Shown: positions 10,201 to 39,500 of the stretch, in pieces
Position numbering within the stretch: the stretch's first letter is position 1
Layout of the letters: each line of letters begins with the position of its first letter
Source of the DNA: Vitrella brassicaformis CCMP3155
Taxonomy: Eukaryota > Protista > Chromerida
Length of the DNA stretch: 64,000 bases
Direction of reading: 5' to 3'
Assembly: GCA_001179505.1 (NCBI GenBank)
Contig: CDMY01000069.1
Location: 1 to 64,000, forward strand
Notes under the pieces: model-generated
Database searches by the model: none
Told to the model about the DNA's origin: nothing
The model's input: only the letters and a program-made list of their open reading frames with translations
Position numbers and translations under genes: made by a program

Positions 10201-10528
10201 ACCACACAACACACGGAAATGCATCCATTTCGACACCCCGTCTGCATCCCTCACTGCCCACCTCGATATCCTCATCGCCGTCCGACACCTCCATCTTATC
10301 TCTCCCGCCGCCCTTCTTATCGCCCTTACCCTTCTCATCCCCCCGCTGCCTCTTCTTGCCGGCCTTCCTGCGCCGCCCTCCCTTGCCATATGCGGAGTCC
10401 TCCTCGTCACTACTGCTGGTGTCAACGTCCATGATGGGTCTCCGCTTCTGCCCGCCGGACGCCTTGAGCAAGGCCAGCTGGCGGGCCGTCATGCGATGGT
10501 CCTCCGCACCCTCACCTGCATCCTCCAT
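7290..10528 (-). CDS. Hypothetical protein: basic/acidic N-terminus, coiled coil, F-box-like motif and long C-terminal domain, multi-exon
   Basis: Chain of minus-strand ORFs 10166-10582, 10045-10425, 9251-10018, 8941-9348, 8436-8996, 8159-8638 and 7290-8192, with GT-AG junctions. LEDLPEALWMADGVGMGAMLGFVSCLESLASVNSFFHHL resembles an F-box (L.DLP.EL...IL..L....L..V...F..L). Confidence 0.6.
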
Positions 10529-10829
10529 GGTGAGAGGGAAAGAGAGGATGGCAGATCTACCTTGCGCTCTTCTGGCCGTCACCTCGCCAAAGTGCGGCGA
10601 GAATCTCCAGTGAGACGAGACGGAAACCCCGCAAACCCTAACTAATGAAATGGATCCACATTTCGCAATTCCCGTCCGCTCTGTTGCCTTCTTTCAGCCG
10701 CGCCTCCCCCATCTCTGTTTCGTTGGACTGCTTGTTGGCTTATGCGCTTACCTATTCTTCTTCAACCCGTCCCTCTTTGTCCAAGTCTTACCCGCTTCTC
10801 GAGGCCTTCTTCCCGTGATCCTGGCGAGT

Positions 10830-12263: not shown

Positions 12264-12317
12264 GTGCTGCTGGAGGAAGAGAATGGGCATGCTGTCTGTC
12301 TGTCTGTCTTGCATCAG

Positions 12318-22089: not shown

Positions 22090-22249
22090 ATGCATATGGT
22101 GTTGGGAGGGCGTGGCGTGTGTGATATATGGATGTGTGGTGGAATCGATCGATGGTCTTTCTGTCCCTGTCTGAGTGTATGGGGACCCGACTGGCGTGTG
22201 ATGCATCAACCGTGCCGGACCCTTCCACCGTTGGTTCTACGACGATCGA

Positions 22250-22570
22250 TCGATACTCATGAAGCTGTCCATCCATCCATCCATCCATCCAACGTGTCTG
22301 CTCACCGAGCGGTCACCGGAGTAGTGGGATACCAACAGAACACACCGTGTAGTGTATGACCGTCCCAACAAAGAGGTCACGTCTGTCGGGAAAGAAAGAC
22401 GCACAACAAACAGAGACATGCAAAGGAGCACGCGAAGAGCAGACGACATCTCGGCAAATATAAAATGTAGACAGCGGTGTTCACCGCCTCCTTCCCGCCC
22501 CACTGCCCGACCGTCTGTCCATATGCGTCCCGAAAGAACAAACTGTACGTACGCTACGCATTGCAATCAT
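22250..22570. repeat. Dispersed non-coding repeat, shared with about 29410-29570
   Basis: Shared blocks CCAACGTGTCTGCTCACCGAG, TACCAACAGAACACACCG and TATGCGTCCCGAAAGAACAAACTGTACGTACGCTACGCATTGCAAT. It also contains, on the minus strand, the CTACATTTTATAT motif seen at about 11260 (+) and about 31220 (-). Confidence 0.8.
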
Positions 22571-22699
22571 GCAGGGCAACCACACACGCACGCCCACCCC
22601 ACTATGAACAACCACCCGTCAGTCATTCACACATACATACAAGGGCCCGACCCGATCCTCGATAGATCACTGCGTCCTCCATTCATCCATCCTCGATAG

Positions 22700-25600
22700 C
22701 TACACCCAACCATGCCATGCAGCCCCACCAGGTCGCTCGGCCATTATCAGTTGGCCATCTCGGTGCCGTCGGCACACAGTGCAGCGACGGATTATTAGTG
22801 GCCCCGTGCCGCCGTCTCCGAGAAGGCAACTGGGCGGCGGGGCGGGGCTGAGGGCGGTGAGGCCCGGGGAGGGGAAGGGGGTGAGGTCGAGTGTGTGTGT
22901 GTGTATAGGGGCCACGCTGTCCCTCTTCCTAAACCAGTGAGTGACACGCACACACGTCAGAGAGATACTGTGTGTGGATTGACCAAGGCATACAGACATA
23001 CATACATACACACATACGTTATATGTGTGTGTCGCCTTCCTTACCGTGCGGAGAGGTGAAAGTCGATGAACCTCTTGGCGGCCGAGCCGCAGCCGTTTTG
23101 TCGGAGGCCCTTCCTGCAGGCAGGCAGGCAGGCAGGCAGCCAACAACACATTGACACCAACCAACCAGAGACATACACGTACATAGACAGATAGGTGCAC
23201 CTGACTGACTGACTGACTGGTGCGTGTGATGACTGACTGACTGACGCAGCAGGCTGCCCTTGCTGCTGCTGCGGCTGGACTGGGATGGGTGTGGGGGATG
23301 AGCCTGCACGAGAGAGAAATAAGGGAAACGATGAATGTGATGTTGTAGCACGGTGAGTGATCTCACCATGGTGGCCATGGGGTGGCGCCGGTGCGGACAG
23401 GCTCCTCAGGTGAGTGACGGGCCGCTGAGCGTACTGCAAGAAGGTCCCGCTGACGGTCAGCTACCAACCAGGGGGCGGCTCCACACGCACACCCGACGAA
23501 CGGTGCTCGAAGGCGGACACGGTGGCCGTGTGGTGCTCTACCACACAGCCGGCGAGCATAGGGTGACAGAAATAGAGGAGCTGTGGCCAGGAGAAGGCTG
23601 ACGAAGAGGAACTGGCCGCACTGGTCGCTTTGCGCCAAGAGCTAAAAAAAAGCAAAACGTCTTGTCTCCCATCTCGCGGATTCTCGCCGGCGATTTTCAA
23701 TTTACGGTTGTGAATCCGAGTAAGCGAGTGCATCGACGACGCGACACATACGTATGTCGGGCCCACGGAATCTGTGGACTAATCAGTGCCTGTATGAGAG
23801 TCGGCTGCTGGGTACTTCTACGTATGAATGCATGTCTGTCTGTCTGTCGTCAATGTGTGTATGCGGATGGACATGTGTGAGCCGCAGCCGTCTTGTCGGA
23901 GGCCCTTCCTGCAGGCAGGCAGGCAGGCAGCCAACAACACATTGACACCAACCACCAGAGACATGGACTAACTGAGGTTGGTGCGTGTGATGACTGACTG
24001 ACTGACTCACCTGAACGTGTTGGTCGGGTATCGGCGGCCGACCACCGCCACGAAGACACATGCCGTCATCCCTTCCCCCTCCTGGTGTTGCGGCGGCGGC
24101 TCCCGCGGCCTTCTTGACCCACTGCTGCACCTGGGGCTGCCGCTGTTTGGCGCTGCAGATCCCGCCTCTCTTCTGCTTGCGGCGCACCTGACCCTTCCTC
24201 GGAGGCTCCTTGAGGGTCGACCCAGCGCCACACAACAGGCCAGCGGGCTCCTTCGCAACACACACGACAAACAAACAAATCAACAACCAGGTGAGCGGGC
24301 GCCTCATTCTCCCCTCTTTCTCTCATCATCAATCGTCCCATCCCCTCTCACCTGATCGGCGGGCGACGACGGGTCGCCTCTTCGCTGCCTGTGCGACGAA
24401 CCACTTTCATGTATGCGGCCATGCAGCCCCTCCTCAGTCTTCTCGGCCGCCTGGTCCTGCTGCTCATTTGGACTGACTGATACATACATACGATAAATAC
24501 CAATGAATGAGAGAGGGTGAGTGAGGGATCCCCTCAATGCATTGAGAGAGCCGCTCAGGATGCATGCATGCATGCATGCATGGGATGGATGGATGGAGTA
24601 TGTATGTATATCAATCCTTCAAGCTTGTTGGACTCACTCAACGTACGGCAGTCTGTCTATCCACACAGACGTTGTACACACACTGACTACACATCACATA
24701 GTATAGTCACCCCAAAAAGCAAGTACATACATACATACATACACTACCCAGAGTCCCTCCCCCGCCAACACAACACAGCACAGCTGAGTCCACTCGAAGG
24801 CCAGACACGCCCAGCATATCACACAGCAGCGTGTTGTCCACCAGCGGCAATATGTGAGGGAGTACCAGCCGCGATGTAGGGGAGGGGGGAGTACCAGCCG
24901 TCGCCGCTCTCGGTGAAGAAGTGACCGCGCTGCTCCATCAGCAGCGACACGTTGGACAGGGCCGTCAGCTTGATGGGCATGTTGATCATCAGGGCGGCTG
25001 ACAGATGGTACGTACAGCACGGGTCTGTCGATGCGCACATGCCAGAAGGTCACACCGATGAGCACTGAGAGACCCCCCGATATCATCACAGAGTCATACA
25101 CACACACGTCCGTCAATACGTGCCCTCACCTGACGCTCCAGGTGAGTCACCCACACAGGCAGATAGACCAAGACGAAGTCAGCGAGTGTGTTGATGACTG
25201 TCTTGGAGAGGCGGTCCGAGAGCGACAGGCCGATGAGCACGGGTGAGGAGGGCGAGGAGGGGGAGTGGCGGAGGGAGGGGGGCAGCGATGGACTAGTTGC
25301 CCCGTGCCGCCGTCTCCGAGAATGCTAATGGGCGGCGGGGCGGGGCAGAGGGCAGTGGGGCCCGGGGAGGGGAGGGGGGTGAGGTCGAGTGTGTGTGCGT
25401 GTCGATGGGGGCTACGGGGTCCCTTTTCCTAAACCAGTGAGTGACACGCACAAATGTCAGAGAGATAATTTATGTGGATTGACCAAGGCATACAGACATA
25501 CATACGTTATGTGTGTGTGTCGCCTTCCTTACCTCAGTTCGGGGAGGTGAAATGTAAGGAACCTCTTGGCGGCCTCCTTGTCCAGCCGCAGCCGTCTTGT

Positions 25601-25906
25601 CGGAGGCCCTTCCTGCAGGCAGGCAGGCAGGCAGGCAGGCAGCCAACAACACATTGACACCAACCAACAGACACATGGACAGAGAAAATGGTTGGTGCGT
25701 GTGATGACTGACTGACTGACTGACTCACCTGAACGTGTTGGTCGGGTTGCGGCGGCCGACCACCGCCACGACGACACATGCCGTCATCCCTTCCCCCTCC
25801 TGGTGTTGCAACGGCGGCTCCCGCGGCCTTCTTGACCCAGTGCTGCACCTGGGGCCGCCGCTGCTGCTGCCCGGCGCTGCAATTCTTTCTGCGCACCTGC
25901 CTCTTC
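22700..25906 (-). repeat. Tandem mosaic of degenerate module copies (PDQHVQ|EGPPT[KR]RLRL exons plus G-rich 3' segment) and captured gene pieces
   Basis: 22740-23230 resembles 25290-25730 and 30850-31130. 24010-24200 resembles 25729-25906. 23240-23560 resembles 32285-32580. 23770-23875 resembles 33183-33305. 25123-25285 resembles SFI1 33985-34142. Confidence 0.8.
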
Positions 25907-25947
25907 CTGGGATAGATACATACACAAATCAGCCACATCCAATCATG

Positions 25948-26270
25948 CCACATGCATCCCCGCCCCGCCCCTTACATACGTCTTGGTGAGCTGCCGTTGG
26001 TATCTCTGCCCGAGCGCCTCGCTCTTGTCCCTCAGCCCCCTCTGCACCAGCGCCCAGGACCCCCAGCACTTGAAGGTCCGGGCAAAGAGGTTTCGCAGGG
26101 GAATGCTGGCATACACGCCGAGGTGCTGTGAGAGCCGCAGCCGTTGCTCCTTGCCCTGGCGGAGTGCCTGCAGGAGGCTGGCGAACGAGACGCGCTTGAG
26201 CTGCATGTCCCAGTGGCACGAGGCCGACTGGCGGCGAGTCTGCTCGTGAGTGAAGCCATGCACCCATCGG
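25948..26270 (-). pseudogene. Near-identical copy of an SFI1-gene exon (source about 37866-38191)
   Basis: Same peptide, HGFTHEQTRRQSASCHWDMQLKRVSFASLLQALRQGKEQRLRLSQHLGVYASIPLR.LFARTFKCW..WALVQRGL.DKSE.LGQRYQ..LTKT, with the donor site retained. Confidence 0.85.
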
Positions 26271-26570
26271 NNNNNNNNNNNNNNNNNNNNNNNNNNNNNN
26301 NNNNNNNNNNNNNNNNNNNNNNNNNNNNNNNNNNNNNNNNNNNNNNNNNNNNNNNNNNNNNNNNNNNNNNNNNNNNNNNNNNNNNNNNNNNNNNNNNNNN
26401 NNNNNNNNNNNNNNNNNNNNNNNNNNNNNNNNNNNNNNNNNNNNNNNNNNNNNNNNNNNNNNNNNNNNNNNNNNNNNNNNNNNNNNNNNNNNNNNNNNNN
26501 NNNNNNNNNNNNNNNNNNNNNNNNNNNNNNNNNNNNNNNNNNNNNNNNNNNNNNNNNNNNNNNNNNNNNN
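26271..26570. other. Assembly gap (300 N) at the end of a tandem repeat
   Basis: N run. Confidence 0.98.
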
Positions 26571-27045
26571 GCCTGGCGCCGCTGCTCTTTGAGCTCCGCC
26601 TGGTGCTCGTCGCTCAGCGTCTGCAACTCAGTGGTCAGCTGACGCTTCAAACGATCCGCCTGCATTGCACCGAACCCACACCAAATGGATCAGACGGGTG
26701 TCGGCTGAGTGGGTGGGTTGGTGAGAGGGGTTACATACCTCTTGCTTGAGCTTTTCCTCTGACGCGACGGCCCGTTCTTTGTCGAGTTTGAGCTGCTCGG
26801 CCTGGCGCCGCTGCTCTTTGAGCTCCGCCTGGTGCTCGTCGCTCAGCGTCTGCAACTCAGTGGTCAGCTCACGCTTCAAACGATCCGCCTGCATTGCACC
26901 GAACCCACACCAAATGGGTCAGACGGGTGTCGGCTGAGCGGGTGGGTTGGTGAGAGGGGCTACATACCTCTTGCTTGAGCTTTTCCTCCGACGCGACGGC
27001 CCGTTCTTTGTCGAGTTTGAGCTGCTCGGCCTGGCGCCGCTGCTC
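26571..27045 (-). repeat. 229-bp tandem exon-plus-intron duplication (at least 2 units, running into the gap)
   Basis: GCCTGGCGCCGCTGCTC recurs at 26571, 26800 and 27029 (period 229). Each unit is a 150-bp phase-0 exon (ADRLKR...EEKLKQE) plus a GT-AG intron. Confidence 0.9.
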
Positions 27046-27842
27046 GTGGTGACGCGTCTGCTCCTGCACAGCACACATCAGCAGATAGTGCTGATGAGTG
27101 TATCCGTGTGTGACGGCGCCCTGACCTGCTTCAGCTGTCGCGTCGTCTCCTGATAGTTCTGCTCCAACACCGCAATCGACCTAGTCAGCTGCAGACAGGT
27201 AGGCAGTTGGGCAGGCAGGCAGGCAGCACACGGACGCCCATGGTTGATTGCTCGGAGACAAAAATTATGTTGCTTGTATCTCTGTTCCCCCCAGGCGTGC
27301 AGTGCAAAGCAGACGTACCTTATTCTGTTCCTCCTTGAACACGTCAGCCTCCCGACGAGCTTGCCTGACCGACCGGTCCACACCAGCAGCACATATATAC
27401 CGGATGTATGCATGTGGCCTCCCAGGTATAGCTATAGCGACATCCATACATACCTCTGCTTATCGGCTGCTGTCCTGAGGTCCTGTTCCATGGCCGAGAT
27501 TGCGTGAATGCGGTCCTTCTCGCGATGCTCCAGCCGCTCGCACTTGGTCGTCAGGTCCTGACGCTCCAACTCGTAACGGTGACAACTCTCCTGCACACAT
27601 ACACACACGCATGCATTGCATTGCATTGCATCCGCCGATGCGTTCGTCGTGTGCTGTGCGCGTGTCACATGCCCGTGTGTGGTTACAGTACTGACCTCCA
27701 GCTTTCTCCTGAACTCTTCTGCGAGCCGCTTGGCACGCTGCACATCGGCCTGCAGCTCCTCCACACGACGGTCGAGGGCAAGACGGTCGTTAAGAGCAGA
27801 TGGCGACAAGCGCCTTCCCAGCAAAGGATGCATGTGTATCAT
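26571..27842 (-). CDS. Coiled-coil protein, multi-exon; 3' end lost in the gap
   Basis: Spliced heptad-rich exons: LALDRRVEELQADVQRAKRLAEEFRRKLE|ESCHRYELERQDLTTKCERLEHREKDRIHAISAMEQDLR|...SIAVLEQNYQETTRQLKQ|EQTRHHEQRRQAEQLKLDKERAVASEEKLKQE|ADRLKRELTTELQ... Confidence 0.7.
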
Positions 27843-28170
27843 ATGTTGCGGCGATATCCGCCAAGGCGGCCGTGGCGCATATGCTGCTGAATTCAGCATT
27901 TTGTCAGCCTTTTAGACCCACGTTTTATGGCTGTTTGTTTTGCGGAAATACAAGCTCGCAAGCTCCCCACAGAGATTCGAGAAGGCATACGGCGAGGAGG
28001 AGAATTGCAGAGCGCTCAACAGAGAGGCAAGTGAATGATTTTCGGTCTCGTGAGGGCCTAGCCGTGTTTGCTTGTGTTTACTTGTGTTGCTCGCTGCGGC
28101 CGAGAGATCCGCATGGCCGGCCATCCAAGACTAAGAAGACTTTCATCGTCATCGATGACGTCGGTGCGTA

Positions 28171-28679
28171 ATGACACTCGAAGAGGCGGGAGATCAGCTC
28201 ATTCATGCAGAGAGAAGACGTGTCTGGCCTGCTACTGTATCTTGGCCGTGGGCGGTTGTCTTGGCCGTGGGCATCGCTATCGACGTTTTCACGACAGCAT
28301 TTCAGTCATCGGCCACGACGGTGGCACAAAACGGCATGGCAGCAGCCATGCAGCGTGTGTCACTCATTAACTTCCCACTCAGCAGAGTACAGCCATGTGT
28401 GAGGCCGGCGATTGGCAGCGGGACCGGGATGTGCACCCACGTGACGACAACAGTGACGTGCAGATCAACTACCATGGTCTTCCTGAGCCAGTGGCTGGAG
28501 GAGGGCACTCAGGTCATGCTGCTGATGACGTCGGAGGGCATGTTGACGGCGCCGGCAGGACGACAAGTATGTTCGAGGCCCGACTTATCGACGACACTCG
28601 GCTGGCTACAGGCACAACTGAGGATGAGTTCTTCGCGAGAAGGGGGTAAAGCTGGTACCTCAACCCATCGGTGGACGTT

Positions 28680-28721
<42 letters not shown>

Positions 28722-29065
28722 TGTGTGGCTCAGTGAGTTGGGCCAAGTTACGGCGACAGCGTCGTTGAGTGTGATCCATCCACAAGGGCCACTTGAACAA
28801 CTCCATCAAGGTCCTCGGGCCATACCTCCCACAAACAGCACGTAAGCGGACACACACACCCACACGTGCGCGTCACAACACGCGCACGTGGCTGGCATGC
28901 ACATCTGGGTGGTGTGTGGTTGTATTGATTGCAGCCCAGGCCGGGGGTTACCCAGAGGGCGGTGCGTTGTATGCGCGGTGCCCCCAGACGGTCATCGCCA
29001 GGGAGGGCAAAACGCCTGCAAGATATGAGCACCACTGTGTTCGTTCTTCTCCGCCCATAAACTAA
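28171..29065 (+). CDS. Possible hypothetical protein with a hydrophobic N-terminal segment
   Basis: ATG-initiated ORF at 28171 (WPWAVVLAVGIAIDVFTTAF), divergent from the coiled-coil gene. No family recognised and the downstream exons are uncertain. Confidence 0.25.
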
Positions 29066-29706
29066 CTCGCCGGACGCTTGAGCTGTCTCGGCCTGCCTGA
29101 TGTGTGCCACACACAATGCAAGGCAGAGACCGGTATGGTATGCACGCACATAATTGATGGTCGATTTCCCGGTGGATGCAGCCAGGATGCGGGGAGACTC
29201 AGACACGTGTGTTCTCTTGTGTCCTACTTCCGTGGTTGCGATGCATATCTGTGAAGTGGACTGGCGGGCGAATGTCTAGGAGAGTCCCACAAATATGAAA
29301 TGCAGACAGCGATCTACAGACACATCAGACCTAGCCGCTCCACCCCTCTCTCGCTGCCACCCTGCCTTTGCCCTCCCTGCCACGTTCCCCGTATCTATCA
29401 GCCCCTCTTCCTGTCCATCCATCCGTCCATCCAACGTGTCTGCTCACCGAGGGGTTACCGAGTGAGTCGTGTGAACTCCTACCAACAGAACACACCGAAT
29501 ATGCGTCCCGAAAGAACAAACTGTACGTACGCTACGCATTGCAATGAAGCTGTCCATCCATCCATCAGCCAGTCAGCCAGTCAGTCATCAGTTATGAACA
29601 CAAGACAGTCACCATGAATACAAGCCTGCCCCTCCCTCCCTCCCTCCCTGCCTTTATCGGTATCATTATCGGTATCGTTATCGGCTGCTGCTGGGGTATC
29701 CCGCCG

Positions 29707-30273
29707 TCAGCTCCTTGGTCGATGGTTGACGGTGCTGGCTCCTGGTCGATAGGCAGGGCTGCCCATGCCGCCGTGAGACTCCGAGAAGGGGGTTGGTCGG
29801 ACGGATGGCCTGCGTTGGTGGTGGCGTGTGGTGGGTCGAGCAGCAGCGGGGCGGCTGTCTTGGTCGGGCACCAGGTCGGGGTATTGCGTGCGGAGTTCTG
29901 CCGCTGTCGCAGGTGTCAGCAGCGCGGCCGGCCTCGACCAGTGATAGCCACCACCATCACTACCGCCAGATGGCTGCTCGCCGCCCCCCATGTGGCCTGC
30001 CCTGTCTTCTGTCTGCACCGCTGCGTCGCGTGTCTCGACCGTGGCTGTGGCTGCGGCTTTGCCGAAAGGGATGCCGGTCCTCTTGCAGACGTCGTGGCCG
30101 TAGGTGTCCAGCAGAAAGCGGCGCGTCGTGCTGCGATCGTAGCAGCAGCCGCAGCTGGCCGGGCACTTAAAGTAATGGACCCCATTTGGCCTGCCGTACT
30201 CCACCATTACACTCCAGCATGTGACGCACAAGACGACGCCGCAGCAGCTGCACTTGCAGGCCCAAGCGGGCTC
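29707..30273 (-). pseudogene. RING-like (RBR RING1/U-box-resembling) Cys-rich coding fragment embedded between module copies
   Basis: Reads EPAWACKCSCCGVVLCVTCWSVMVEYGRPNGVHYFKCPASCGCCYDRSTTRRFLL, resembling the C-G-x-x-x-C-x-x-C-W...C-P-x-x-C second half of an RBR RING1. An in-frame TGA lies just upstream and no start was found. Confidence 0.45.
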
Positions 30274-30287
30274 TCATCCACACTGCA

Positions 30288-31265
30288 TGGAAGCCACATG
30301 CAGAGTGCACCGGACCCTGCAGGGTGTGCGCTTCGGATTCCTCCTCACCTGCCAGGCGGCAGCAGGGTCACTGACAGGGCCACATACATGGCTCCTTTGC
30401 GGCGCTACAGGCACTCTTGGAAGGCGGAAAGCTGGAACCTGCAAAAACGAACACGCGTTGTGTGCATGTTTGTATGTTTGTAAGTTTGTAAGTTTGGATG
30501 GATGGATGGATGGATACCTACTCGAGCAGCATGGTCTTGGCCCGCTCCTTCTCCAAGGCGATCTCCAACCACACCGCACCTCTCGCACTGGGGCTGACGA
30601 GTAGGGCGTTCAACTCGTGCTACACACACAACAGACATGAACAGCCATACCTTCATTGCATGTGTGCCTTTCGTTTGTCTTGTATGCTGCTGATGGCTCC
30701 CCGCAGTCGCCAAATCTTCTCGCGCTCAGCGTCGTTGTAGTCGAAGAGATGCCTCTTGGCCGCCTCCACCAGCTCCCTAAGAACACTCTCTCGGCCGAGT
30801 CGGCGGCCGCTGGCTCTGAATGCCGACCCCTTCTGGTGTGCATCCACGTCAGAGATATAATTTATGTGGATTGACCAAGGCATACATACACACATACGTT
30901 ATGTGTGTGTGTCGCCTTCCTTATCTCAGTGCGGGGAGGTGAAATGTAATGAACCTCTTGGCGGCCTCCTTGTCCAGCCGCAGCCGTCTTGTCGGAGGCC
31001 CTTCCTGCAGCAGGCAGCCAGGCAGCCAACAACACATTGACACCAACCAACAGAGACGTAGACAGAGAAGGTGGCTGGTGCGTGTGATGACTGACTGGGT
31101 GACTGACTGACTCACCTGAACGTGTTGGTCGGGTTGCGAGCAGCGCCACGAAGACACGTGCCGTCATTCCTTTCCCTCCTGGTGTTGCGGCGGCGGCTCA
31201 GCAAATACGTCCATGGATATAAAATGTAGGCAACGATTGCCTACGGGCACGACAGGATGCCAGTC
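30288..31265 (-). pseudogene. Inverted copy of the 11250-12263 module
   Basis: Same exons (MDVFAEPPPQHQEG; EGPPTRRLRLDKEAAKRF; RESVLRELVEAAKRHLFDYNDAEREKIWRLRGA; AVWLEIALEKERAKTMLLE; FQLSAFQECL*). The exon-2 donor is mutated from GT to AT (about 30923-30924). Confidence 0.8.
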
Positions 31266-31779
31266 GACACGAACATTGGGTACTCACGACAGTATTGCGA
31301 ACGAGTGTCGACCCTCTGCAGCGCAAGTTTGGTCGATGAATCTGGTGCGTACCGTGCGGCGTCGCTTTTCCCTGACACACTCCTTCCCGTATCTTCCTGA
31401 TTGTGTGGGCTTCGGCTTTGGTTGGGGAGGCACTGGGATGGGTGTACACATACACAAACACATACACAGGTGCGCAATCGTGCTCCCACGCTTGCCTACT
31501 CTGCCACGTTGGAGACGGCCACTCTCCGAGGAAGCACCACCAGTATTCTCTCCTCCTCTTCGGCCAAAGCCATCAAAATTGGCACCTGTGCATTCAATCA
31601 ACAGATGCGCGCACACACACACACATACGTGTCTAAGCAAGTCAATCCGAATGCTTGGTTGGCGGTGCCTCAAAGAACACGGAGGAGCCTGCCGCGCGCA
31701 CAAGAGAGAATGCATTGAAGGGGCTGGAGGAGGGAGGTATGTCAATGACACACCTTGGCGATGTCTGCACGGGACGCAG

Positions 31780-32880
31780 GCTGTGTGAGTGCTGCAGCAG
31801 CCGGCGGCTCACGATGCGGCTGACGCAGACAGACAGACAGACAGATGGGAGTGTGTAAACGTGTCTGTCCACGAAGACCCACCGGCGCACCCACCTGATG
31901 CTGTCGAGTGCCTTTGTGCAGTGCTCCTTATTGCCCCTGCTGCCCTCCTTCGCCTCGGCTTCGGCGGCCGCATTGTCAGAAAGCCGCTCCTGCATTTCCT
32001 CGACAGCGATCTCGTCAGCAGTGCCGTTCTGGACGACGACGGCCCTGTCAGGAGCCTTGGCCGATTGGGGGGTGTTGCTGTCGGCCGGTGGGGTGGCCTT
32101 GCCCTTGCCAAGCGATAGGGTGGCCTGCTTGACCTTTGGGGGACGGGCCGTCTTGGCCGCTGCCTCGTTGGCAGAGCCCTCTCCGCTGTCGGGCTTGGGC
32201 CTCCTCTCCCTCTGCCTGCCCCCATCAATCCCCCTGTTCCTCACGCCAGAATGAGACTTGTTCCTCTGCACCCCCGCCACATCCTGCTGCCCTTGCTGCT
32301 GCAGCTGCTGGACTGGGATGGGTGTGGGGGGTGAGCCTACACGAGAGAGAAATAAGGGAAACGATGAACGTGATGTTGCACCACGGTGAGTGATCTACCA
32401 TGGTGGCCATGGGGTGGCGCGGAGAGGCTCCTCAGGCGAGTGGCAGGCCGCTGGGCGTACTGCAAGAAGGTGCCGCTGACGGTCAGCTGCCAACCAGGAG
32501 GCGGCTCCATACGCACACCAGACAAACGGTGCACTAAGGCGGACACGGTGGCCGTGTGGTGCTCTACCACACAGCCGGCTGTGAGAGTGCTGCAGCAGCC
32601 GGCGGCCCACGATGCGGCTGACAGGAGACAGACAGACAGAGATGGGAGTGTGTAAACGTGTCTGTCCACGAAGACCCACCGGCGCACCCACCTGATGCTG
32701 TCGAGTGCCTTTGTGCAGTGCTCCTTATTGCCCCTGCTGCCCTCCTTCGCCTCGGCTTCGGCGGCCGCATTGTCAGAAAGCCACTCCTGCATTTCCTCGA
32801 CAGCGATCTCGTCAGCAGTGCCGTTCTGGACGACGACGGCCATGTCAGCAGTGCCGTTCTGGACGACGACGGCCCTCACG
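31780..32880 (-). repeat. Two local duplicates of a chimeric exon (VVQNGTADEIAVEEMQE.LSDNAAAEAEAKEG...) fused to an SFI1 exon end and intron
   Basis: 31790-32045 resembles 32580-32840. Both end in TKALDSIR|GT plus intron, matching SFI1 38380-38510 (TKALNSIR|). 32805-32840 and 32842-32875 form an internal tandem repeat. Confidence 0.75.
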
Positions 32881-33519
32881 ACGGCTTGAACGCCAAGAAG
32901 CTAAATAAAAGTAAAACGTGGCGCCAGCGTGGATCTTGTGGGAGGGCGGCTGGCGAAGAGAACAGGTGAAAAGGGGCAGAGATGGAGGAGAAAAACAGCA
33001 CAAACTGTGTGGCAAATCTGATAGATTACATCGTCTCTGTCCCCGGCGAGAATTCTCGACACGGCGGTCAAATTCACGCGGAAAGGCACTGAGGCCACGT
33101 TTCGCTTGTCGAATTGACCACAGCTGACTTCCCACCCGTCACGCCATCCCGACAAGTCAGCTGAAAGCCTCCAAGGATGCTTGGATCTGTGGACTTATCC
33201 CAGGATGAGTTCAGGAGGCGTATCTCCGCCTGCTGGGTACTTCTACGTATGAATGCATGTCTGTCTGTCTGTCTGTCGTCAATGTGTGTATGCGGATGGA
33301 CATGTGATGCACTCATGGATGGACGTATCTGTCAGTCGAATGAATGAATGCACCCACCAACATTTGTCGACGAAACACCACAGAAGCTGTCGAAGCCATC
33401 TTTCTGTACACGCTTGCTACGGTAGTCAAATCCCAAGTGACCGCGTCAGAAGCAGAAACCGCCCACATCCCCCACCCCACCTTACAAACAATCCCGACCA
33501 TCAGCCCACATCTACCTCC

Positions 33520-36500
33520 CTATGACCACTGGTCATCCCTCAGACCGCCTGCGCCATTCTGTCGATGCTGATGCTGCCTCGGCAGCTGCGATATCGGCGG
33601 CAACGGCATCGGCTCCCTCCGATATTCACGCCGACTACGATGGCTCGGGTACGAGCGCTGGGCTGACGCGCTCCTCTGCAAATGCTGACCGGGGCCTGGG
33701 CGAGGCTGCACACTGTCGGCCGATCGGACATTGGTGGACCGAGCTGCCACAGCTGCCAGGGTGGACTGAGCCGCCTCTGCGTGTTGCGAGGCCGCCATCA
33801 TGGTGGACATGTCGGTGATGTTGCGCGACATGGCCTCCGTCGCAAAGGCGGTAGTGTCGTCACACCCGTCATCGAAGCTCGCCGGGTGGAAGGGGACAGA
33901 TGATGCTGGTCGAGCTGCCGGCCCGGCCGACTTGCTGACGATGCCGAGGCTGCCCCTGGACACCTCCTGGGGGCCCTCGCCCCTCACCTGACGCTCCAGG
34001 TGAGTCACCCAGACGGGCAGATAGACCAAGACGAAGTCAGCGAGTGTGTTGATGACTGTCTTGGAGAGGTGGTCCGAGAGCGACAGGCCGATGAGCACGG
34101 GTGAGGAGGGCGAGGAGGGGGAGTGCCGGAGGGAGGGGGGCAGCACGTCACACCAGTCCGGGTCAAAGTGATCGGGGGGCCTTCTCGATGGCGACGCAGC
34201 TGCTGCAGCAGCTGCGACTGATGGGGCGTGGGGTCTGGGGTGTGAGAATGTGGGGGATTGCAGCCGGGCGGCCGCTGACCGGAGGGCCAGGAACAGCTGG
34301 TCGGAGCTGCCAGGGGCCAGGACGGAACCAACCTACACCCATCCACGCAGAGATAGATAGATACACTTGCATTCCATGCCGTGTGCGGTGTGTGCTGTGG
34401 CCTTACGTCTTGCAGAAGATTTTCGAGTCTTGTCCTGGCTTTGTTCCACTTGGGGCTGTCCATCCGCAGCACTGCCTCACTCGCCTTCCAGCGACACAGA
34501 GGCCACCTGTATGATATGCACACACGGCCAGTGGACCACATACACACACATAACTATATATATCCAAGTCCGCTCCGTCCCCAGTGTGTCACCCACTCGT
34601 TGTTACCTCTCCGGTGCGTCAGAGTATCGTCCCCTGTGCATGTTCCTTGCGGCCCTCCTCCAGCGCATGATGGAGTCCTGCATCTGTTCACGCCACCAGG
34701 CCACGTCCATCAACACTCCCAGCGGGGGGAAACCCACACCACCACCACGAGCGTTAGACACCCCACGAGGCTCGTCCTGACACAAAGACCCGAGCAGGAA
34801 CGACACACCCATGCCATGGATGGAATGAAGGAGGCCATTGGGTGCGTGCTGTTCCATTCCATTCCATGCACCTGTTTCTTGATCCGCCCCCACATGATTT
34901 GCAGTGTCGGGTTGCGCCGCATGGCCTGCAGCCACCCCAGCCGGTCCAGCCACAGATGGTCGGCGGCATGCCGGTCCAGGAAATGGAGCGCACGCAGCTT
35001 CCTGCCCACGCCGCACAACCTGAATGCCATGATACGATACACACATAGCGAGTGGATGGATGGATGCGTCAGTCATCCGTCGATTCGATGGGGGCTGGGC
35101 TGCTGTGGCCTCACTTGTGGAGGGCGTCCTGCATGGCGCAAGTGCGGTTCATTGCGAGTCGCCTGGTCAGCAGGTACCTCAGTCGCTGCCTGTCGTGTGT
35201 CATGGCCTGCCAGGCACGCCATATGCGACGCAGCCGATCCTCCCGGTGGAACTGACTCACCACCTGCACACATGACATGACACCCACCAATCCAATCCCT
35301 CTGCCAGAAACTGCATCTCCCCTCCACTGCATCTCCGCTCCAGTTACCTGGAGGAGCCTCTGGTGGTCTTTGGACATGCGGACATACTGCACCCAGACGC
35401 CCCATATGTGCCGCAAGCAGTGCTCCGACGCCATCCGACGCGCCTCGTCCGTCGAGCGACGCCGACGGCGGTGCCGCGCCGCCCAGCCCTGCCAGTGGTG
35501 CGTCCGTGTGCGCAACACCTGATACATTCATTGATCCATCCAGACATTTCGCCAGAAATCGTTGGGTGTGTGTGTAGGGGCTGACCTTGCGTTGCTGCAT
35601 GTGTGCAAAGGATCGCTGTGCGTCCTGTTGGATGCGCCTTGAGTGGAGGGCGTGGAGGTGCATGGCGTCGAAGCATCTCCTCTGCAGCTGGTGTGCGTAG
35701 TGCACGTCGGTGAGCTGGGCGCACTTGAGCTGCATGGCTGTGAAGTGACGCCACATAGCGAAATAGGCTACCACCGTCGACGATGCACGGCGGCGGAGGA
35801 TCTATGAAAAGGGGCCAAGACAGAAGCTAGTATTTACATCTCTCTCTCTCTCTGTGTGTGTGTGTGCGTGTGTGTCTGGGTGGGCTGACCTGTTTGTTTC
35901 TCGTCTTTCGTTGTGTCCAGGCCCGCCACTCGCCGACCACGGCCGCCTTGAGGTGTGGCAGCCGAGCAGCTATGAAGGACGACGCCTTCCGACGCAACTG
36001 AAGCAAGGCACACAGACAGACAGACAGACAGACGTCCATGGCGTGGATGGTACGTGGGGCGTTCTGTCTGATCGATGTCCATGTAACTAAGGTACCTGTG
36101 CCCTGGTGCGTGTCTGTTGTGCCCACGCTGCGACTGCGATGGCGAGCAGCTTCTCGTCAGACAGTATGCCCAGCTAATTGATACATTGATTACACACACG
36201 GAAATACGGACAGAGAGCGTATGTATGTCTGTGTGTGGTTGTGTGTGAGAGATGGGGTCTGCTTGGGTTGCCTACCCGCCTGTAGAGCTGCCGTCGCCGA
36301 GTCCACCACACCCACTGCTGCAGCGACTGCACAACACACACATACACACAAACGTGAACGCACCCCAGCAAATGTATGTTATGTTTCCTCAAGTGAGCCA
36401 TCAGTGAGTGAGTGAGTAGCTCGGTCGGTCACCTTTCTGGCATTGTTGGCGGTTGTGTGCTTGACGAGTGTGTTGTGGGCGTGCCTGTGCATCCGGCGAG

Positions 36501-39500
36501 TGCGGCACTCCGACCACCAATGCCGCAGACGCACACGCAGCACCACACTGCACACACACAACACACACAGACAGAGAGACACGGATGCACCACCCACCCA
36601 CATGCCTTTCCTCTGTCCCCCTCCCCCCAGCTCACTCACCTGCTGCCAATGGCCGTGAGGTCCGTGAGGCGCTTCCTGTCGCCATACCAGCCGTACCACC
36701 GCGCCAGGGTCTTGCGCGCCAGGTGGGTTAGGAAGTGCGACAGGGCCACCAGTGCGGCGTGCCTGGTGTGCTGCCGCACTTGCGTGTATTGGTGCCAGTG
36801 GCGGATGGCGGCCTTAGCGCGGCTCCGGCTGCCTCGGGCGTGCAGGGTGCGATGCCGCTGACGGGTGCGGACATAGGACTGATACACACATACACACGGG
36901 GGATTGCAAGGCGTGTGTGTGAGAGAATTGTGTGTGTGTGTGTGTGTGTTACCTGCCATGTGTGTATGGCTCTGTGGCCTTTGCTGTGCAGCTGTGCGAG
37001 GTGGAAGGCGTCGGCACACTCGCGGACCTGGTGCTGTTGCGACACACATCACACAAGAGAGTCTTTCGAGCAACCTCCTTCGCCTGTGTGGCCATGTGAG
37101 TGAGTGGGCTGTCTTACCTCGTGGTGTGTGAGGTCTTTCCAGTAGGTGAAGAAGTGCTTGAATGTGTGCTGGGCCTGCCGACAGGACACAGCCGCACCCA
37201 ACTGACGCAGCAACACCTGCACAGCACAAACGAAACGGCCCACATACACAGACATAAAGCGAAGATCCTGCCTGCTCGTATGCACAGACCCGTCTCTGGA
37301 CGAAGTATTTCCATGCCTCGAAGGCCCGACACTCAAGCACACGACAATCGCTGCAGACACACGTGATCGCATCGCATCACAGCCGTATGAATGAGAGAGA
37401 CGGCCAGACATCAAAACACAAGGTCACACCTACCTGTTGAAGAGTATGTCCCAGGCCCTCTTCCTCTGTATCTGCTGCAGGCGGTGTCTGAGCAAACCCA
37501 GCCACCCGTGGGCCACCAGCTGACGCTCACGCACACCCGACAAACGGTGCTCTAAGGCGGACACGGTGGCCGTGTGCTGCTCTACCACACTGAATGAATG
37601 AACCAACCAGGAAGGACAACACACGCGCAGAAGGAGTGACACACAGGGCTGTGTGTGTGGGTGTGTGGGTGTGTGTGGGTGACCTGAGCCATCCTTTGAA
37701 GTAGAGCGTGAGCTTTGCCTTGTTCCACCTCGAGAGGAATGCCGCCACGCGTGTGTTGAGGACCCCCTGCCGCTCATACATCTGACGCCACTCAGACCAA
37801 CACCTGCACACGCACACACAGAATGTGATACACACACCGACCATGCCACATCCGATGACACACACACATGCATCCCCCCTCCCGCCCCTCACATAACCTA
37901 CGTCTTGGTGAGCCGCTGTTGGTATCTCTGCCCGAGCCCCTCGCTCTTGTCCATCAGCCCCCTCTGCACCAGCGCCCAGTACCGCCAGCACTTGAAGGTC
38001 CGGGCAAACAGGTCTCGCAGGGGAATGCTGGCATACACGCCGAGGTGCTGTGAGAGCCGCAGCCGTTGCTCCTTGCCCTGGCGGAGTGCCTGCAGGAGGC
38101 TGGCGAACGAGACGCGCTTGAGCTGCATGTCCCAGTGGCACGAGGCCGACTGGCGGCGAGTCTGCTCGTGAGTGAAGCCATGCACCCATCGGGACCACCT
38201 GAATCAGATCAGCGACGGAGGAGGGAGGGAGGGAGGGAGGGAGGGATCTGTGTGTGCCTTGGCTGTGTGTGTGTGTGAAGGTGACGTGACTTACGTGTTG
38301 AGAGTGTGCCGTCCTCTGATGAGCTGCAGCCTCTCTGATGCTGCGAGTGTGCGCGCAGCCATGGCGTCCGAGAACTCCGACAGTCGGCTGTGCGAGTGCT
38401 TCAGCAGCCGGCGGCCGACGATGCGGCTGGCAGTAGACAGACAGACAGATGGGAGTGTGTAAACGTGTCTGTCCTGGGGCACCCACCTGATGCTGTTGAG
38501 TGCCTTTGTGTGCTGTGTGACGAGCCGCCATGCGTCGAACAGGAGCCTGGCGAAGGCGAGGCGCTTCGCGGGGATGAGCACCCGCTCGGCCACGTAGAAC
38601 TGACGCTGCTTGGTCCGCCAGTAGCGCCACAGCGCACCCACCAGACGGCTGGCGTGTCGCGAGGACACCTCACCACCAATGGCAGCCAGACGCTGGCACA
38701 CACACATGGAGAGTCAGAGAGAGAATGAGTGCGATCAAATCCACTGGTGGATTTGGCTTGTGTGTGTCTGTGTGTCTGTACCTTTGCCCCAGCCATGCGG
38801 TGTTTGTGTTGTCTCAGGCGCTGCAATGCCTCCCTCCTTCGCTTGGCGTCGAGCCGCATGCGCATGGCCGCCACCTTGGCGGACCGCCGCCCACACGTCC
38901 GCCACACGTCGAAGCAAAACTTGAGCAAACGACACACCTGATACACACGAAGAACAAGATGAAAGAGGGAGATGTTGTGTGTGTTCAGTTGGTGTATGAT
39001 TTCTTTCGTTGCCCCCCTGCCTGTGATGTGTGCATGAGGTTTGCGATTTGTCTGCGGTCGCTGCCGTGTCTGGCCGGCACCCGCCACACACTCACTATCC
39101 GCTCCAACACTATACGCGCACGGTAGCTCGCCTGGCAAACACACACACAGACAGACAGACCAAGGGGAGGGGCACACACATGATGCGATGCGGCATATGT
39201 CCATCCACACGTGCGTGTGTGTGTGCATAGACACGTACGGCGGCAGCTTCCTTCTGGTGTTGCCTGCTGAGCGCCGTGGCGTTGGCTTGCCACTGGTGGA
39301 GGTGCTGGGCCATGAGGGACAAACGGTAGTGGGAGGTGGCGAGGCGGCACCTCTGACGACTCCACTGACGGCCAACTACTCACAAACACACAACACAATA
39401 GACAGACACCCATACATGCGTTTGTTTGTCAGTCTGTGTCTCTCCCTCCCTCCCTCTCCCTGTCCCTCTCACCGGTCCACTGTGCCCATTTGTGTATGGC

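What the first reader, a model, noticed from the sequence alone, without database searches (positions are those of the whole stretch)
22100..33310. Local exon-shuffling zone built from a repeated module plus pieces of neighbouring genes
Seen: about 11 kb between PP2C and SFI1 consists of intron-containing segments, almost all in the same (minus) orientation. They are copied from (a) a multi-exon module also present inverted at 10.8-12.3 kb, (b) at least four parts of the adjacent SFI1 gene and (c) orphan exons (RING-like, coiled-coil, VVQNGTADE). Introns are retained, so the copying was DNA-level, not retroposition. No transposase, Rep/helicase, RT, TIR or TSD was recognised. Inference: a gene-birth hotspot driven by a non-autonomous capture element (Helitron/Pack-type) or by microsatellite-mediated template switching.
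Basis: partly seen in the sequence, partly recalled or inferred. Interest (0 to 1): 0.75.

Follow-up and report, generated by a model that had tools for sequence, protein, structure and literature searches.

The report
Patchwork of copied gene pieces
An 11-kb stretch of the alga Vitrella brassicaformis really is stitched together from copied pieces, introns included, of neighbouring and far-away genes, all pointing the same way and with no sign of a jumping gene, so it looks like new genes being assembled by error-prone DNA copying, although expression and the draft assembly remain unchecked.

Summary
In Vitrella brassicaformis CCMP3155, 68% of window 22100-33310 is about 30 sharply bounded segments, 71-100% identical to other DNA. 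Relatives are an inverted copy at 10.85-12.26 kb, five parts of the downstream SFI1-like gene, and at least 15 places on 13 other contigs. These include an ABCG transporter exon, six exons of a coiled-coil gene, and a long exon on C305. The "orphan" exons therefore have relatives. Introns and GT-AG sites are kept, so copying was at DNA level.

Junctions carry 2-5 bp microhomology or 2-9 bp filler. I found no TIRs, no canonical Helitron end, no Rep/helicase and no poly(A). All pieces whose strand could be read lie in sense on the minus strand. Several keep open frames, and one chimeric gene is annotated.

The gap is flanked by repeats on both sides, so continuity across it is unproven.

The zone also carries a 21-nt exon-start motif whose 13-nt core occurs 598 times in the genome. 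This ties it to the motif-punctuated mosaic arrays the scan noted on other DNA (s1-221653, s1-252824). A sister note, s1-201986, covers part of this stretch.

Best reading: repeated end-joining or template-switch duplication, not transposon capture.

The parts
22272..22567 (-). Copy of 29414-29545, interrupted by a 173-bp insertion (22348-22520). The insertion is a circular permutation of a C343 segment (L004 2745-2817 followed by 2652-2752). It carries the 21-nt motif at 22458-22478.
   Evidence: The empty site is at 29497|29499. There is 6-bp filler and no target-site duplication.
22781..23219 (-). Partial module copy 'Md', comprising the NLS-like exon m2 plus a 174-bp tail. It is 82.5% identical to 25282-25718.
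23253..23553 (-). Copy of 32286-32579 (91%). It includes a 63-bp piece of the SFI1-like gene (23484-23546 matching 37528-37590 at 95%).
23802..24247 (-). A chain of three abutting pieces: a copy of 33227-33306 (94%), module copy 'Mc' at 23880-24203 (85% to 25584-25912), and a 47-bp C305-like piece at 24201-24247 (87%).
   Evidence: The junctions have TG filler and GGA microhomology.
24257..24470 (-). The 3' part of an exon, its GT donor and about 100 bp of intron. It belongs to a dispersed family; the best match is C465:61941-62185 (82%).
   Evidence: The exonic indels are 24 and 3 bp, so in frame.
24790..25127 (-). ABCG-transporter fragment. An exon piece at 24790-25067 is 92% identical to C466:228664-228944. 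It is joined at ACTG to an intron piece at 25064-25127 (88%), with 295 bp of the source skipped. Indels break the frame.
   Evidence: (the source ORF hits ABC2_membrane at 1.6e-17).
25123..25286 (-). Copy of 33981-34144, from the 3' region of the SFI1-like gene (97.6%). Sharp junctions on both sides have 5-bp microhomology (CCCTC and GCAGC).
25282..25912 (-). Module copy 'Mb': exon m0/m1, an intron with a (GTCA)n run, the NLS-like exon m2 with its GT donor, and a 174-bp tail shared with Md.
25915..26270 (-). Copy of an SFI1-like exon (291 nt, open frame) with its donor and about 65 bp of intron, matching 37827-38192 (92%). The 178 bp next to the gap are 100% identical to the source.
26271..26570 (.). 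Assembly gap (a run of N). It lies between two contigs that were joined by scaffolding.
   Evidence: The assembly method is in PMC4501334.
26571..27045 (-). Tandem repeat of 229 bp, 2.1 copies visible at 98% identity. Each unit is a 150-nt hybrid exon (phase 0-0, 50 aa of coiled coil) plus a 79-nt GT-AG intron. The array very likely continues into the gap.
26819..27800 (-). Six consecutive exons, with five introns, of a coiled-coil gene paralogue. It is 81% identical to C403:53144-54161. All splice sites are kept.
28602..28975 (-). Piece related to C239:99809-100272 (74-93%). It has a compensated frameshift and a (TC)n(TG)n microsatellite at one edge.
29277..29676 (-). Segment 'S2', homologous to 11061-11221. 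It is split by a 167-bp insertion (29432-29598) at a (TCCA)n run. A variant 21-nt motif follows at 29293-29313.
29710..30273 (-). Cys-rich ('RING-like') open frame. It has no Pfam family. It is 38% identical over 73 aa to an 875-aa ORF on C831. It is separated from the module's frame by one in-frame TGA.
30286..31346 (-). Fullest module copy 'Ma', with exons m1-m5. It is preceded by a 147-bp motif-bearing piece at 31200-31346 (85% to C466:154187-154337), with the motif at 31217-31237. The donor of exon m2 is mutated from GT to AT.
31499..32843 (-). Annotated chimeric gene (P0001, 267 aa). A C305-like exon body (31916-32311, 74%) is fused in frame, at GTG microhomology, to the last 9 codons, donor and intron of an SFI1-like exon (31779-31918 matching 38386-38510). 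The fused unit is duplicated (31776-32054 matching 32574-32851 at 96%).
32937..33306 (-). Two items at the right edge of the zone: a piece of a dispersed family (C929 at 92%; C592 and C410 at 71-82%), and the source or sibling of 23802-23877 at 33227-33306.
10853..12264 (+). Its order is S2 (11061-11221), 7-bp filler, then the motif (11258-11278) and module exons (11229-12264). The zone has the module first, then 609 bp, then S2. A variant motif lies further on at 14650-14670.
33981..38510 (-). Donor stretches within the downstream SFI1-like repeat gene, which is on the same strand. This gene also donated an exon to a separate mosaic on C507 (90%).

Best explanation
The zone is a real, single-copy 'duplication hub' lying just 3' of an SFI1-like gene on the same strand. 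Over a long period, stretches of 50-1000 bp of genomic DNA were copied into it. The copies carry exons with their introns. Their identities to relatives range from 71% to 100%, which implies many events. They came from the neighbouring gene, from the zone itself and from unlinked genes.

The pieces were joined by illegitimate, microhomology-using processes. These would be end joining, or replication or repair template switching of the MMBIR/FoSTeS type, possibly through small circular or tandem intermediates. No transposon was involved.

Composite units were then re-duplicated locally. One was copied, inverted and permuted, to 10.9-12.3 kb.

All pieces lie in sense on the minus strand, and many keep splice sites and reading frames. 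The products are therefore spliceable chimeric transcription units, and at least one is annotated. Other pieces, such as the ABCG fragment, are decaying.

The zone is one low-copy member of a genome-wide set of same-strand arrays whose units begin with a conserved 21-nt exon-start motif.

Shown: the segments, their relatives, the junction anatomy, intron retention, frame preservation, and the absence of transposon hallmarks.

Inferred: the joining mechanism, the order of events, that co-orientation reflects selection within a transcribed unit, and that the chimeras are expressed.
For: Segment map and 68% coverage.

Unlinked relatives at 15 or more places on 13 contigs, against near-empty control windows.

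Breakpoints are abrupt. Of 14 junctions, 7 have 2-5 bp microhomology, 1 lies in an 18-bp (TCCA)n run, 1 is blunt and 5 have 2-9 bp filler.

Two filled-versus-empty site pairs show no target-site duplication, and there are two circular permutations.

Introns are retained with every GT-AG site intact in the coiled-coil piece. Its exons are 91.5% identical with 0 indels in 508 bp. Its introns are 82% identical with 96 gap columns in 531. The joined frame is open for 169 aa in both copies.

The tandem unit is a 150-nt exon plus a 79-nt intron.

The C305-like exon has six indels, all multiples of three.

The in-frame exon fusion is used by the annotated protein P0001.

Transposon tests were negative: no TIRs, no hairpin+CTRR, no RepHel on C69, no similarity to RepHel loci, and no poly(A) on the coding strand.

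The motif's 13-nt core occurs 598 times in the genome against 1 for the reversed control, with 5 instances in the window where chance predicts 0.

Two other loci are equally patchy: C507, where I did not look for the motif, and the motif-bearing array on C113.
Against: Nothing independent of this 2015 short-read scaffold confirms the junctions. The zone contains one unresolved gap flanked by repeats.

Random template switching or end joining does not by itself predict that about 10 of 10 orientable pieces are in sense. I invoke selection or an unknown polarity-keeping step to explain this.

dN/dS is high: 0.81 for the coiled-coil piece and 0.75 for the C305-like piece. Constraint is therefore weak apart from frame and splice-site retention.

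Non-canonical Helitron-like families are reported in this genome. Their ends are unknown to me, so capture by such an element is not strictly excluded.

For single-copy pairs, the direction of copying is inferred from context only.
Confidence: 0.6

Rival explanations
1. A non-autonomous Helitron-like or Pack-type transposon captured the fragments and carried them here.
For: Multiple unrelated gene fragments with introns, all in one transcriptional orientation, are typical of maize Helitron cargo (from my own knowledge). Rep domains of Helitron type exist in this genome, with 14 hits. Earlier notes report odd Helitron-like families here.
Against: There are no TIRs and no hairpin+CTRR+T anywhere in 21.6-33.8 kb. 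No RepHel lies on this contig, and the zone has no DNA or protein similarity to RepHel loci. The composite is single-copy genome-wide. Piece identities range from 71% to 100%, so there were many events rather than one cargo. The follow-up agent of s1-221653, as quoted, judged a 21-23-nt motif of matching description not to be a Helitron end; I did not test that claim and could not confirm that it is the same motif.
Confidence: 0.1
2. Small extrachromosomal circular DNAs, excised from genic DNA and from the zone itself, were re-inserted. This would make circles the vehicle of the shuffling.
For: There are two circular permutations. The 173-bp insert is C343 segment [2745-2817] followed by [2652-2752], with an 8-bp terminal redundancy. 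The 10.9-12.3 kb copy has the order S2+S1 where the zone has S1...S2. Fragment sizes of 50-1000 bp and microhomology at the junctions fit microDNA-like circles (from my own knowledge).
Against: A backward template switch, or a transient tandem duplication, gives the same permutations. Most pieces are not permuted. No circles were observed.
Confidence: 0.15
3. The fragments were reverse-transcribed from unspliced pre-mRNAs, with template switching between RNAs, and were then integrated. This would explain the common sense orientation.
For: All orientable pieces are in sense. Every piece whose source can be read lies in a transcribed-looking region.
Against: Five consecutive introns are retained. 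There is no poly(A) run on the coding strand. No reverse transcriptase was found nearby by Pfam. The skipped 295 bp of the ABCG source does not coincide with an intron. Unequal identities of adjacent pieces argue against a single chimeric cDNA.
Confidence: 0.07
4. The mosaic is an artefact of short-read assembly, either chimeric contigs or collapsed repeats.
For: The assembly is a 2015 Illumina and mate-pair scaffold. The zone contains a gap whose flanks are a 178-bp stretch identical to DNA 12 kb away and a 98% tandem repeat. A 47-bp perfect repeat links 22.5 and 29.5 kb.
Against: The segments differ from their relatives by 2-29%, so they are distinct sequences supported by their own reads. 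Junction overlaps of 0-5 bp are far below any assembly k-mer. Several junctions occur twice in diverged copies, for example 31918/31916 and 32715/32713, and the junction shared by Mb and Md. The exon-intron logic is kept.
Confidence: 0.06

Closest known systems
Gene-fragment capture by Helitrons and Pack-MULEs in plants (from my own knowledge)
   Same: Several unrelated genomic fragments, with introns, are brought together in one orientation. They can be read as chimeric transcripts.
   Different: Here there are no termini, TIRs, target-site duplications, hairpins or transposase. The composite is single-copy. Fragments were added over a wide range of ages.
Mosaic segmental duplications, or 'duplication hubs', of primate genomes (from my own knowledge)
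   Same: Duplicated segments from many loci are juxtaposed at one acceptor site. Junctions are sharp, segment ages are layered, secondary local duplications occur, and fusion genes are born.
   Different: The scale is about 100 times smaller, with pieces of 50-1000 bp in 11 kb. The host is a compact protist genome with only about 1.5 Mb of transposons (PMC4501334). There is strict co-orientation and an associated 21-nt motif.
Microhomology-mediated template switching and templated insertions (FoSTeS/MMBIR, theta-mediated end joining; from my own knowledge)
   Same: Chains of short templated pieces are joined with 2-5 bp microhomology or a few bases of filler. Backward jumps give permuted or duplicated order.
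   Different: Those processes are usually described as single complex events in disease or cancer genomes. Here the pattern is an evolutionary accumulation, with retained splice sites and frames.
Motif-punctuated same-strand arrays of Vitrella noted earlier in this scan (s1-221653, s1-252824)
   Same: A 21-nt sequence sits on the gene strand just after an acceptor-like AG at unit starts. The units are mosaic. Other loci are patchy in the same way.
   Different: This zone uses low-copy donors, including ordinary genes (an ABCG transporter, the SFI1-like gene, a coiled-coil gene), rather than large module families.

Membership tests
Helitron / Helitron-captured cargo | A Rep/helicase (RepHel) gene in the element, or an autonomous partner sharing its ends | tested here: not met
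   PF14214 gives 14 hits in the genome and none on contig C69. Zone ORFs have no Pfam family. There is no blastn or tblastx similarity to six RepHel loci.
Helitron / Helitron-captured cargo | A 3' end with a GC-rich hairpin followed by CTRR, inserted next to T | tested here: not met
   My script scan of 21600-33800 on both strands found 0 sites. Non-canonical ends of the local Helitron-like families could not be tested.
Helitron / Helitron-captured cargo | The same composite present in several copies | tested here: not met
   No other locus holds two or more of the zone's fragments side by side.
Pack-MULE / CACTA-type capture | Terminal inverted repeats flanking the cargo, with target-site duplications | tested here: not met
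   The only inverted repeats are microsatellite-derived. The two filled-versus-empty site pairs show no duplication.
Processed retrocopy | Loss of introns and a poly(A) tail | tested here: not met
   Five introns are retained with GT-AG. The only run of 7 or more A or T is T8 on the coding strand at 23644.
Mosaic segmental duplication / templated-insertion patchwork | Segments from several loci juxtaposed, with abrupt breakpoints carrying microhomology or filler | tested here: met
   Of 14 junctions, 7 have 2-5 bp microhomology, 5 have 2-9 bp filler, 1 is blunt and 1 lies in a microsatellite.
Mosaic segmental duplication / templated-insertion patchwork | Layered ages and secondary duplication of composite junctions | tested here: met
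   Identities range from 71% to 100%. Duplicated junctions occur at 31916-31918 and 32713-32715, and between Mb and Md.
Mosaic segmental duplication / templated-insertion patchwork | Replicative template switching as the actual process | not testable with these tools
   Sequence alone cannot separate end joining, MMBIR and circle re-insertion.
Vitrella motif-punctuated arrays (scan-internal class) | A conserved 21-nt sequence on the gene strand, close behind an AG, at unit starts in same-strand clusters | tested here: met
   Instances lie at 31217-31237(-), 22458-22478(-) and 11258-11278(+), with variants at 29293-29313(-) and 14650-14670(+). The core occurs 598 times in the genome against 1 for the control. 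Twenty of 21 positions are near-invariant in 38 copies, and 33 of 38 have an AG within 12 nt upstream.
SFI1 (name given to the donor gene) | Pfam Sfi1 repeats | tested here: inconclusive
   There is no Pfam hit on ten exon-sized ORFs, six at E<=0.01 and four at E<=1. I read a roughly 33-residue periodicity of L..W..W motifs in the translations.

The most novel reading that the evidence does not exclude
Vitrella has an endogenous, transposon-independent exon-shuffling process. Exon-bearing DNA modules are copied between loci, perhaps as small circles, into same-strand arrays whose units are marked by the invariant 21-nt exon-start sequence. That sequence would act as the splicing or recombination signal that lets new modules be read. 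The zone would then show this process recruiting pieces of ordinary genes into new, selectively retained chimeric genes.
Probability: 0.15. Interest if true: 0.85.

Novelty: new variant of a known kind. Interest (0 to 1): 0.55.

Why it matters
Exon shuffling is usually inferred from old protein architectures. Here the DNA intermediates are still legible. They include filled and empty sites, an in-frame exon-exon fusion that borrowed a splice donor, a phase-symmetric exon-plus-intron unit being amplified in tandem, and fragments of ordinary genes at different stages of decay or retention.

The setting matters too. This is a compact protist genome with very few transposons, close to the apicomplexan parasites, so it points to repair- or replication-based copying as a source of new genes.

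The link to a motif present about 600 times in the genome suggests the zone is one window onto a genome-wide process. That process could be tested with long reads, Iso-Seq and circle sequencing.

Tried and rejected
- The one exhaustive protein search went on a 367-aa ORF that proved to be the wrong frame. It gave 0 hits and says nothing.
- Pfam on 10 zone ORFs, 10 neighbour ORFs and several source ORFs gave only ABC2_membrane for the C466 source, PP2C at 20.65-21.14 kb, and sub-threshold coiled-coil noise.
- The third word-indexed protein search, on the coiled-coil ORF, found nothing in its length range. The second returned only an ORF call of the window itself.
- Rfam found nothing in the window.
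- I asked whether the SFI1-like pieces are the remains of a decayed tandem copy of the whole gene. More sensitive blastn and tblastx found no further collinear remnants. Partial collinearity of three pieces remains unexplained.
- I asked whether the 21-nt motif is a spliced-leader exon. Only 4 copies genome-wide are followed by GT, and no paper links spliced leaders to Vitrella. I did not pursue this further.
- A hairpin overlapping the motif at 31226-31244 is not conserved in other copies.
- The literature searches found no description of this phenomenon in Vitrella.

Full report
WHAT THE DNA IS. The window is G000:C69:1-64000 of a genome of 72,700,666 bases in 1064 scaffolds. That is exactly the size and scaffold number of the Vitrella brassicaformis CCMP3155 assembly. 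That assembly was built from short reads into 4177 contigs, then scaffolded with mate pairs, and its genes were predicted with Augustus (PMC4501334). A protein encoded in the zone is held in public databases under that organism's name (P0001). The same paper reports only about 1.5 Mb of transposable elements in this genome.

THE GAP, TESTED FIRST. The N run at 26271-26570 separates two contigs.

On the left, 25915-26270 is a copy of an exon of the downstream gene (37827-38192). The 178 bases next to the gap are 100% identical to the source. After that there are 9 mismatches in 113 bases, and then a diverged intron.

On the right, the sequence begins in the middle of a 229-bp tandem unit, with 2.1 copies visible at 98% identity. 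Bases 26571-26589 equal 26800-26818, which is the end of a unit. At least part of a further unit must therefore lie in the gap.

Both contig ends thus stop in repeats, which is why the assembler stopped there. The join rests on scaffolding alone. Continuity, reading frame and the copy number of the 229-bp unit are unknown. The 178-bp identical tract is either recent gene conversion or sequence borrowed from the true exon by the assembler.

- A multi-exon module occurs at 30286-31266. Partial copies lie at 25456-25820, 23880-24102 and 22953-23178. An inverted copy lies at 11229-12264.
- Five stretches of the downstream gene recur in the zone: 33227-33306, 33981-34144, 37528-37590, 37827-38192 and 38380-38510.

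Point (c) needs correcting, because whole-genome searches show that most 'orphan' pieces have relatives on other contigs.
- About 1 kb of a long coiled-coil gene on C403, at 81%.
- Part of a 626-aa open frame on C305, at 74%. This is the VVQNGTADE exon.
- An exon and an intron piece of an ABCG transporter on C466, at 92% and 88%. The source ORF hits Pfam ABC2_membrane at 1.6e-17.
- Pieces on C465, C239, C343, C646, C929, C592 and others.
- The Cys-rich 'RING-like' frame, which has a 38%-identical relative inside an 875-aa ORF on C831.

At E<=1e-10 the zone matches at least 15 places on 13 other contigs. Two 10-kb control stretches of the same window match only one paralogue family and one short repeat. 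The zone is therefore exceptional for its neighbourhood.

PP2C to the left is supported by Pfam. The 'SFI1' name rests only on a roughly 33-residue Trp-containing periodicity that I read in the ORFs. Pfam did not detect Sfi1 on single exons.

WHAT THE PIECES ARE. They are genomic DNA with introns.

The coiled-coil piece (26819-27800) aligns to C403 across six exons and five introns, and every GT and AG is kept. Its exons are 91.5% identical with no indel in 508 bases. Its introns are 82% identical with 96 gap columns in 531.

Inside a script I joined the six exons to check the frame. It is open for 169 codons in both copies, and dN/dS is 0.81. All searches were made exon by exon, by reference, and the joined-model search step was left out.

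The 229-bp tandem unit is a 150-nt hybrid exon plus a 79-nt GT-AG intron. The hybrid exon was formed by an in-frame junction between two exons of the C403-type gene. Each added unit therefore adds 50 residues in frame.

The C305-like exon differs from its relative by six indels, all multiples of three. Protein identity is 60% and dN/dS is 0.75. At a GTG microhomology it is fused in frame to the last nine codons, the splice donor and the intron of an exon of the downstream gene. The annotated 267-aa protein P0001 uses this fusion. The fused unit has itself been duplicated, with 31776-32054 matching 32574-32851 at 96%.

The C465-type piece has exonic indels of 24 and 3 bases and keeps its donor.

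By contrast, the ABCG fragment has frame-breaking indels, and one module copy has lost a donor, GT having become AT.

The zone therefore mixes pieces that keep a coding grammar with pieces that are decaying. Constraint on amino-acid sequence is weak.

JUNCTIONS. Similarity stops abruptly at the segment edges. I examined 14 junctions with both partners identified.
- Seven share 2-5 bases with both partners (ACTG, CCCTC, GCAGC, GTG, GGA, GC, AC).
- One lies in an 18-base (TCCA)n run.
- One is blunt.
- Five carry 2-9 bases of filler.

Breakpoints fall in exons, in introns and at exon edges alike. Microsatellites are involved in a minority.

Two pairs of paralogous sites show an event directly.
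- Site 29497|29499 is 'empty', and its copy at 22347/22521 holds a 173-base insertion.
- Position 11149 is 'empty', and its copy holds a 167-base insertion at 29432-29598.
Neither shows a target-site duplication.

Two structures are circular permutations.
- The 173-base insert is a C343 segment read from 2745 to 2817 and then from 2652 to 2752.
- The inverted copy at 11061-12264 has the order S2 then S1, where the zone has S1, then 609 bases, then S2.

That inverted copy is 97% identical to the zone over aligned columns. It holds less of the motif-bearing leader than the zone copy does: 67 bases against 147 bases of homology to C466:154187-154337. It is therefore a recent derivative or sibling, not the parent of the zone's modules. 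The module's exon m3 has no other relative in the genome at protein level.

TRANSPOSON TESTS. All were negative.
- The only inverted repeats are microsatellite runs.
- A scan for a hairpin followed by CTRR and T finds nothing in 21.6-33.8 kb.
- Helitron-type Rep domains exist in the genome, with 14 hits, but none is on this contig.
- The zone has no DNA or protein similarity to six of those RepHel loci.
- No other locus carries two of the zone's fragments together.
- There is no poly(A) on the coding strand.
- Rfam finds nothing.

ORIENTATION. Every piece whose source strand can be read lies in sense on the window's minus strand. The source strand was read in four ways:
- Pfam domain: the ABCG fragment.
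- Splice sites: the C403-type coiled-coil piece and the C465-type piece.
- Long open frames: the C305-like exon and the C831-related Cys-rich frame.
- Motif strand: the C466:154k, C343, C507 and C929 pieces.
The SFI1-like pieces lie on the same strand as their source gene.

That is about ten of ten, or roughly 0.002 if orientation were random. The zone lies directly 3' of the SFI1-like gene on the same strand.

A GENOME-WIDE LINK. Three motif-bearing pieces in the zone (31200-31346, 22354-22520 and 29277-29314), and the inverted copy, share a 21-nt sequence, ATCG[C/T]TGNCTACATTTTATAT. It occurs at 31217-31237(-), 22458-22478(-) and 11258-11278(+), with variants at 29293-29313(-) and 14650-14670(+).

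Its 13-nt core occurs 598 times in the genome, against once for the reversed control. The copies form same-strand clusters, for example 12 copies within 25 kb on C113.

In the 38 copies I examined, 20 of 21 positions are nearly invariant, and 33 copies have an AG within 12 nt upstream. From the sequences printed, an ATG often follows within a few tens of bases.

Two other loci I examined are equally patchy, with many unlinked relatives. One is on C507; it holds an exon of this window's SFI1-like gene at 90% and also contains an assembly gap, but I did not look for the motif in it. The other is a motif-bearing array on C113.

This matches earlier notes of the scan on other DNA (s1-221653, s1-252824). 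I could not confirm that their motif is the same sequence.

Some of the zone's 'sources', those of the C466:154k, C343/C646, C507, C465 and C929/C592 types, are therefore members of dispersed module families rather than unique donors. The ABCG, coiled-coil, C305 and SFI1-like donors look like ordinary genes.

HOW IT MOST LIKELY AROSE. The junction anatomy is the signature of illegitimate joining, meaning end joining or replication/repair template switching. The relevant features are chains of short templated pieces, 2-5 bp microhomology or filler, backward jumps, and no target-site duplications.

The spread of identities, the nested insertions and the re-duplicated junctions show many events over time, not a single catastrophe or a single captured cargo.

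Co-orientation is not explained by that mechanism. I attribute it to retention only of sense pieces within a transcribed unit, or to an unknown polarity-keeping step. This is inference.

The rivals, with my estimates, are as follows.
- Helitron or Pack capture, 0.1. The orientation bias fits, but every structural test failed.
- Circular DNA intermediates, 0.15. This is really a variant of the main reading, suggested by the two permutations.
- Reverse transcription of pre-mRNA, 0.07. Introns are kept and there are no tails.
- Assembly artefact, 0.06. Diverged copies, overlaps too short for any k-mer and duplicated junctions argue against it, except at the gap.

COMPARISON AND NOVELTY. In effect the zone works like Helitron or Pack-MULE cargo, or like primate duplication hubs. 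Fragments of many genes are juxtaposed in one orientation and yield fusion genes.

It fails the membership tests for transposon capture and for retrocopies. It meets those for mosaic segmental duplication with microhomology junctions.

What is unusual is the miniature scale, the host (a transposon-poor chromerid), the clean examples of exon fusion and exon-plus-intron amplification, and the tie to a motif present about 600 times. My searches of the held library found no description of this in Vitrella. I rate it a new variant of a known kind.

LIMITS.
- There is no second assembly or strain to compare with.
- The ends of the local Helitron-like families are unknown to me.
- The direction of copying for single-copy pairs is inferred from context.

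Noticed in passing
window 31217-31237(-), 22458-22478(-), 11258-11278(+); variants 29293-29313(-), 14650-14670(+): A 21-nt sequence, ATCG[C/T]TGNCTACATTTTATAT, is nearly invariant at 20 of 21 positions. It usually sits just after an acceptor-like AG, and from the printed sequences an ATG often follows soon after. The 13-nt core occurs 598 times in the genome in same-strand clusters, against once for the control. Only 4 copies are followed by GT, so it is not an obvious spliced-leader exon.
   Followed up: partly
window 6932-10561 (minus strand): A multi-exon gene of a family with at least 6 copies (C589, C554, C643, C206, C613; 74-85% identity over about 3.3 kb, plus weaker relatives). It has no Pfam family. 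Homology in five copies stops sharply at 10539-10567, in three of them exactly at 10561, just before the inverted mosaic at 10.85 kb.
   Followed up: partly
L018 = G000:C507:15000-24000: A second mosaic locus. It has an assembly gap at C507:19997-20296. It has abutting pieces related to C897 (three non-collinear pieces), C158, C791, C376, C973, C262 and C929. It holds an exon of this window's SFI1-like gene (90%). It also holds a module family of 30 or more copies.
   Followed up: partly
window 26093-26270 versus 38015-38192: A 178-bp tract of perfect identity sits inside an otherwise 92%-identical pair and ends at the assembly gap. It is either recent gene conversion or sequence borrowed by the assembler.
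   Followed up: partly
window 32811-32874: A perfect 33-bp tandem duplication (1.9 copies) repeats the codons MAVVVQNGTAD at the start of the annotated chimeric gene.
   Followed up: no
window 28680-28727 and about 35836-35890: A compound (TC)n(TG)n microsatellite of the same form occurs at dozens of loci across the genome. One copy sits at the edge of a zone segment.
   Followed up: no
window 50528-51937: A stretch of about 1.4 kb has three paralogues on contig C405 (75-78%). This looks like an ordinary small gene family. I used it as the control contrast to the zone.
   Followed up: no
window 12519-14073: The region downstream of the inverted module copy has its own relatives: C69:126435-126794 (81%) and C606:27501-29502 (67-72%). 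The plus-strand unit between the motifs at 11.26 and 14.65 kb may therefore be another chimeric gene.
   Followed up: no
window 19559-19858: A second assembly gap lies just upstream of the PP2C-like ORFs, outside the zone.
   Followed up: no
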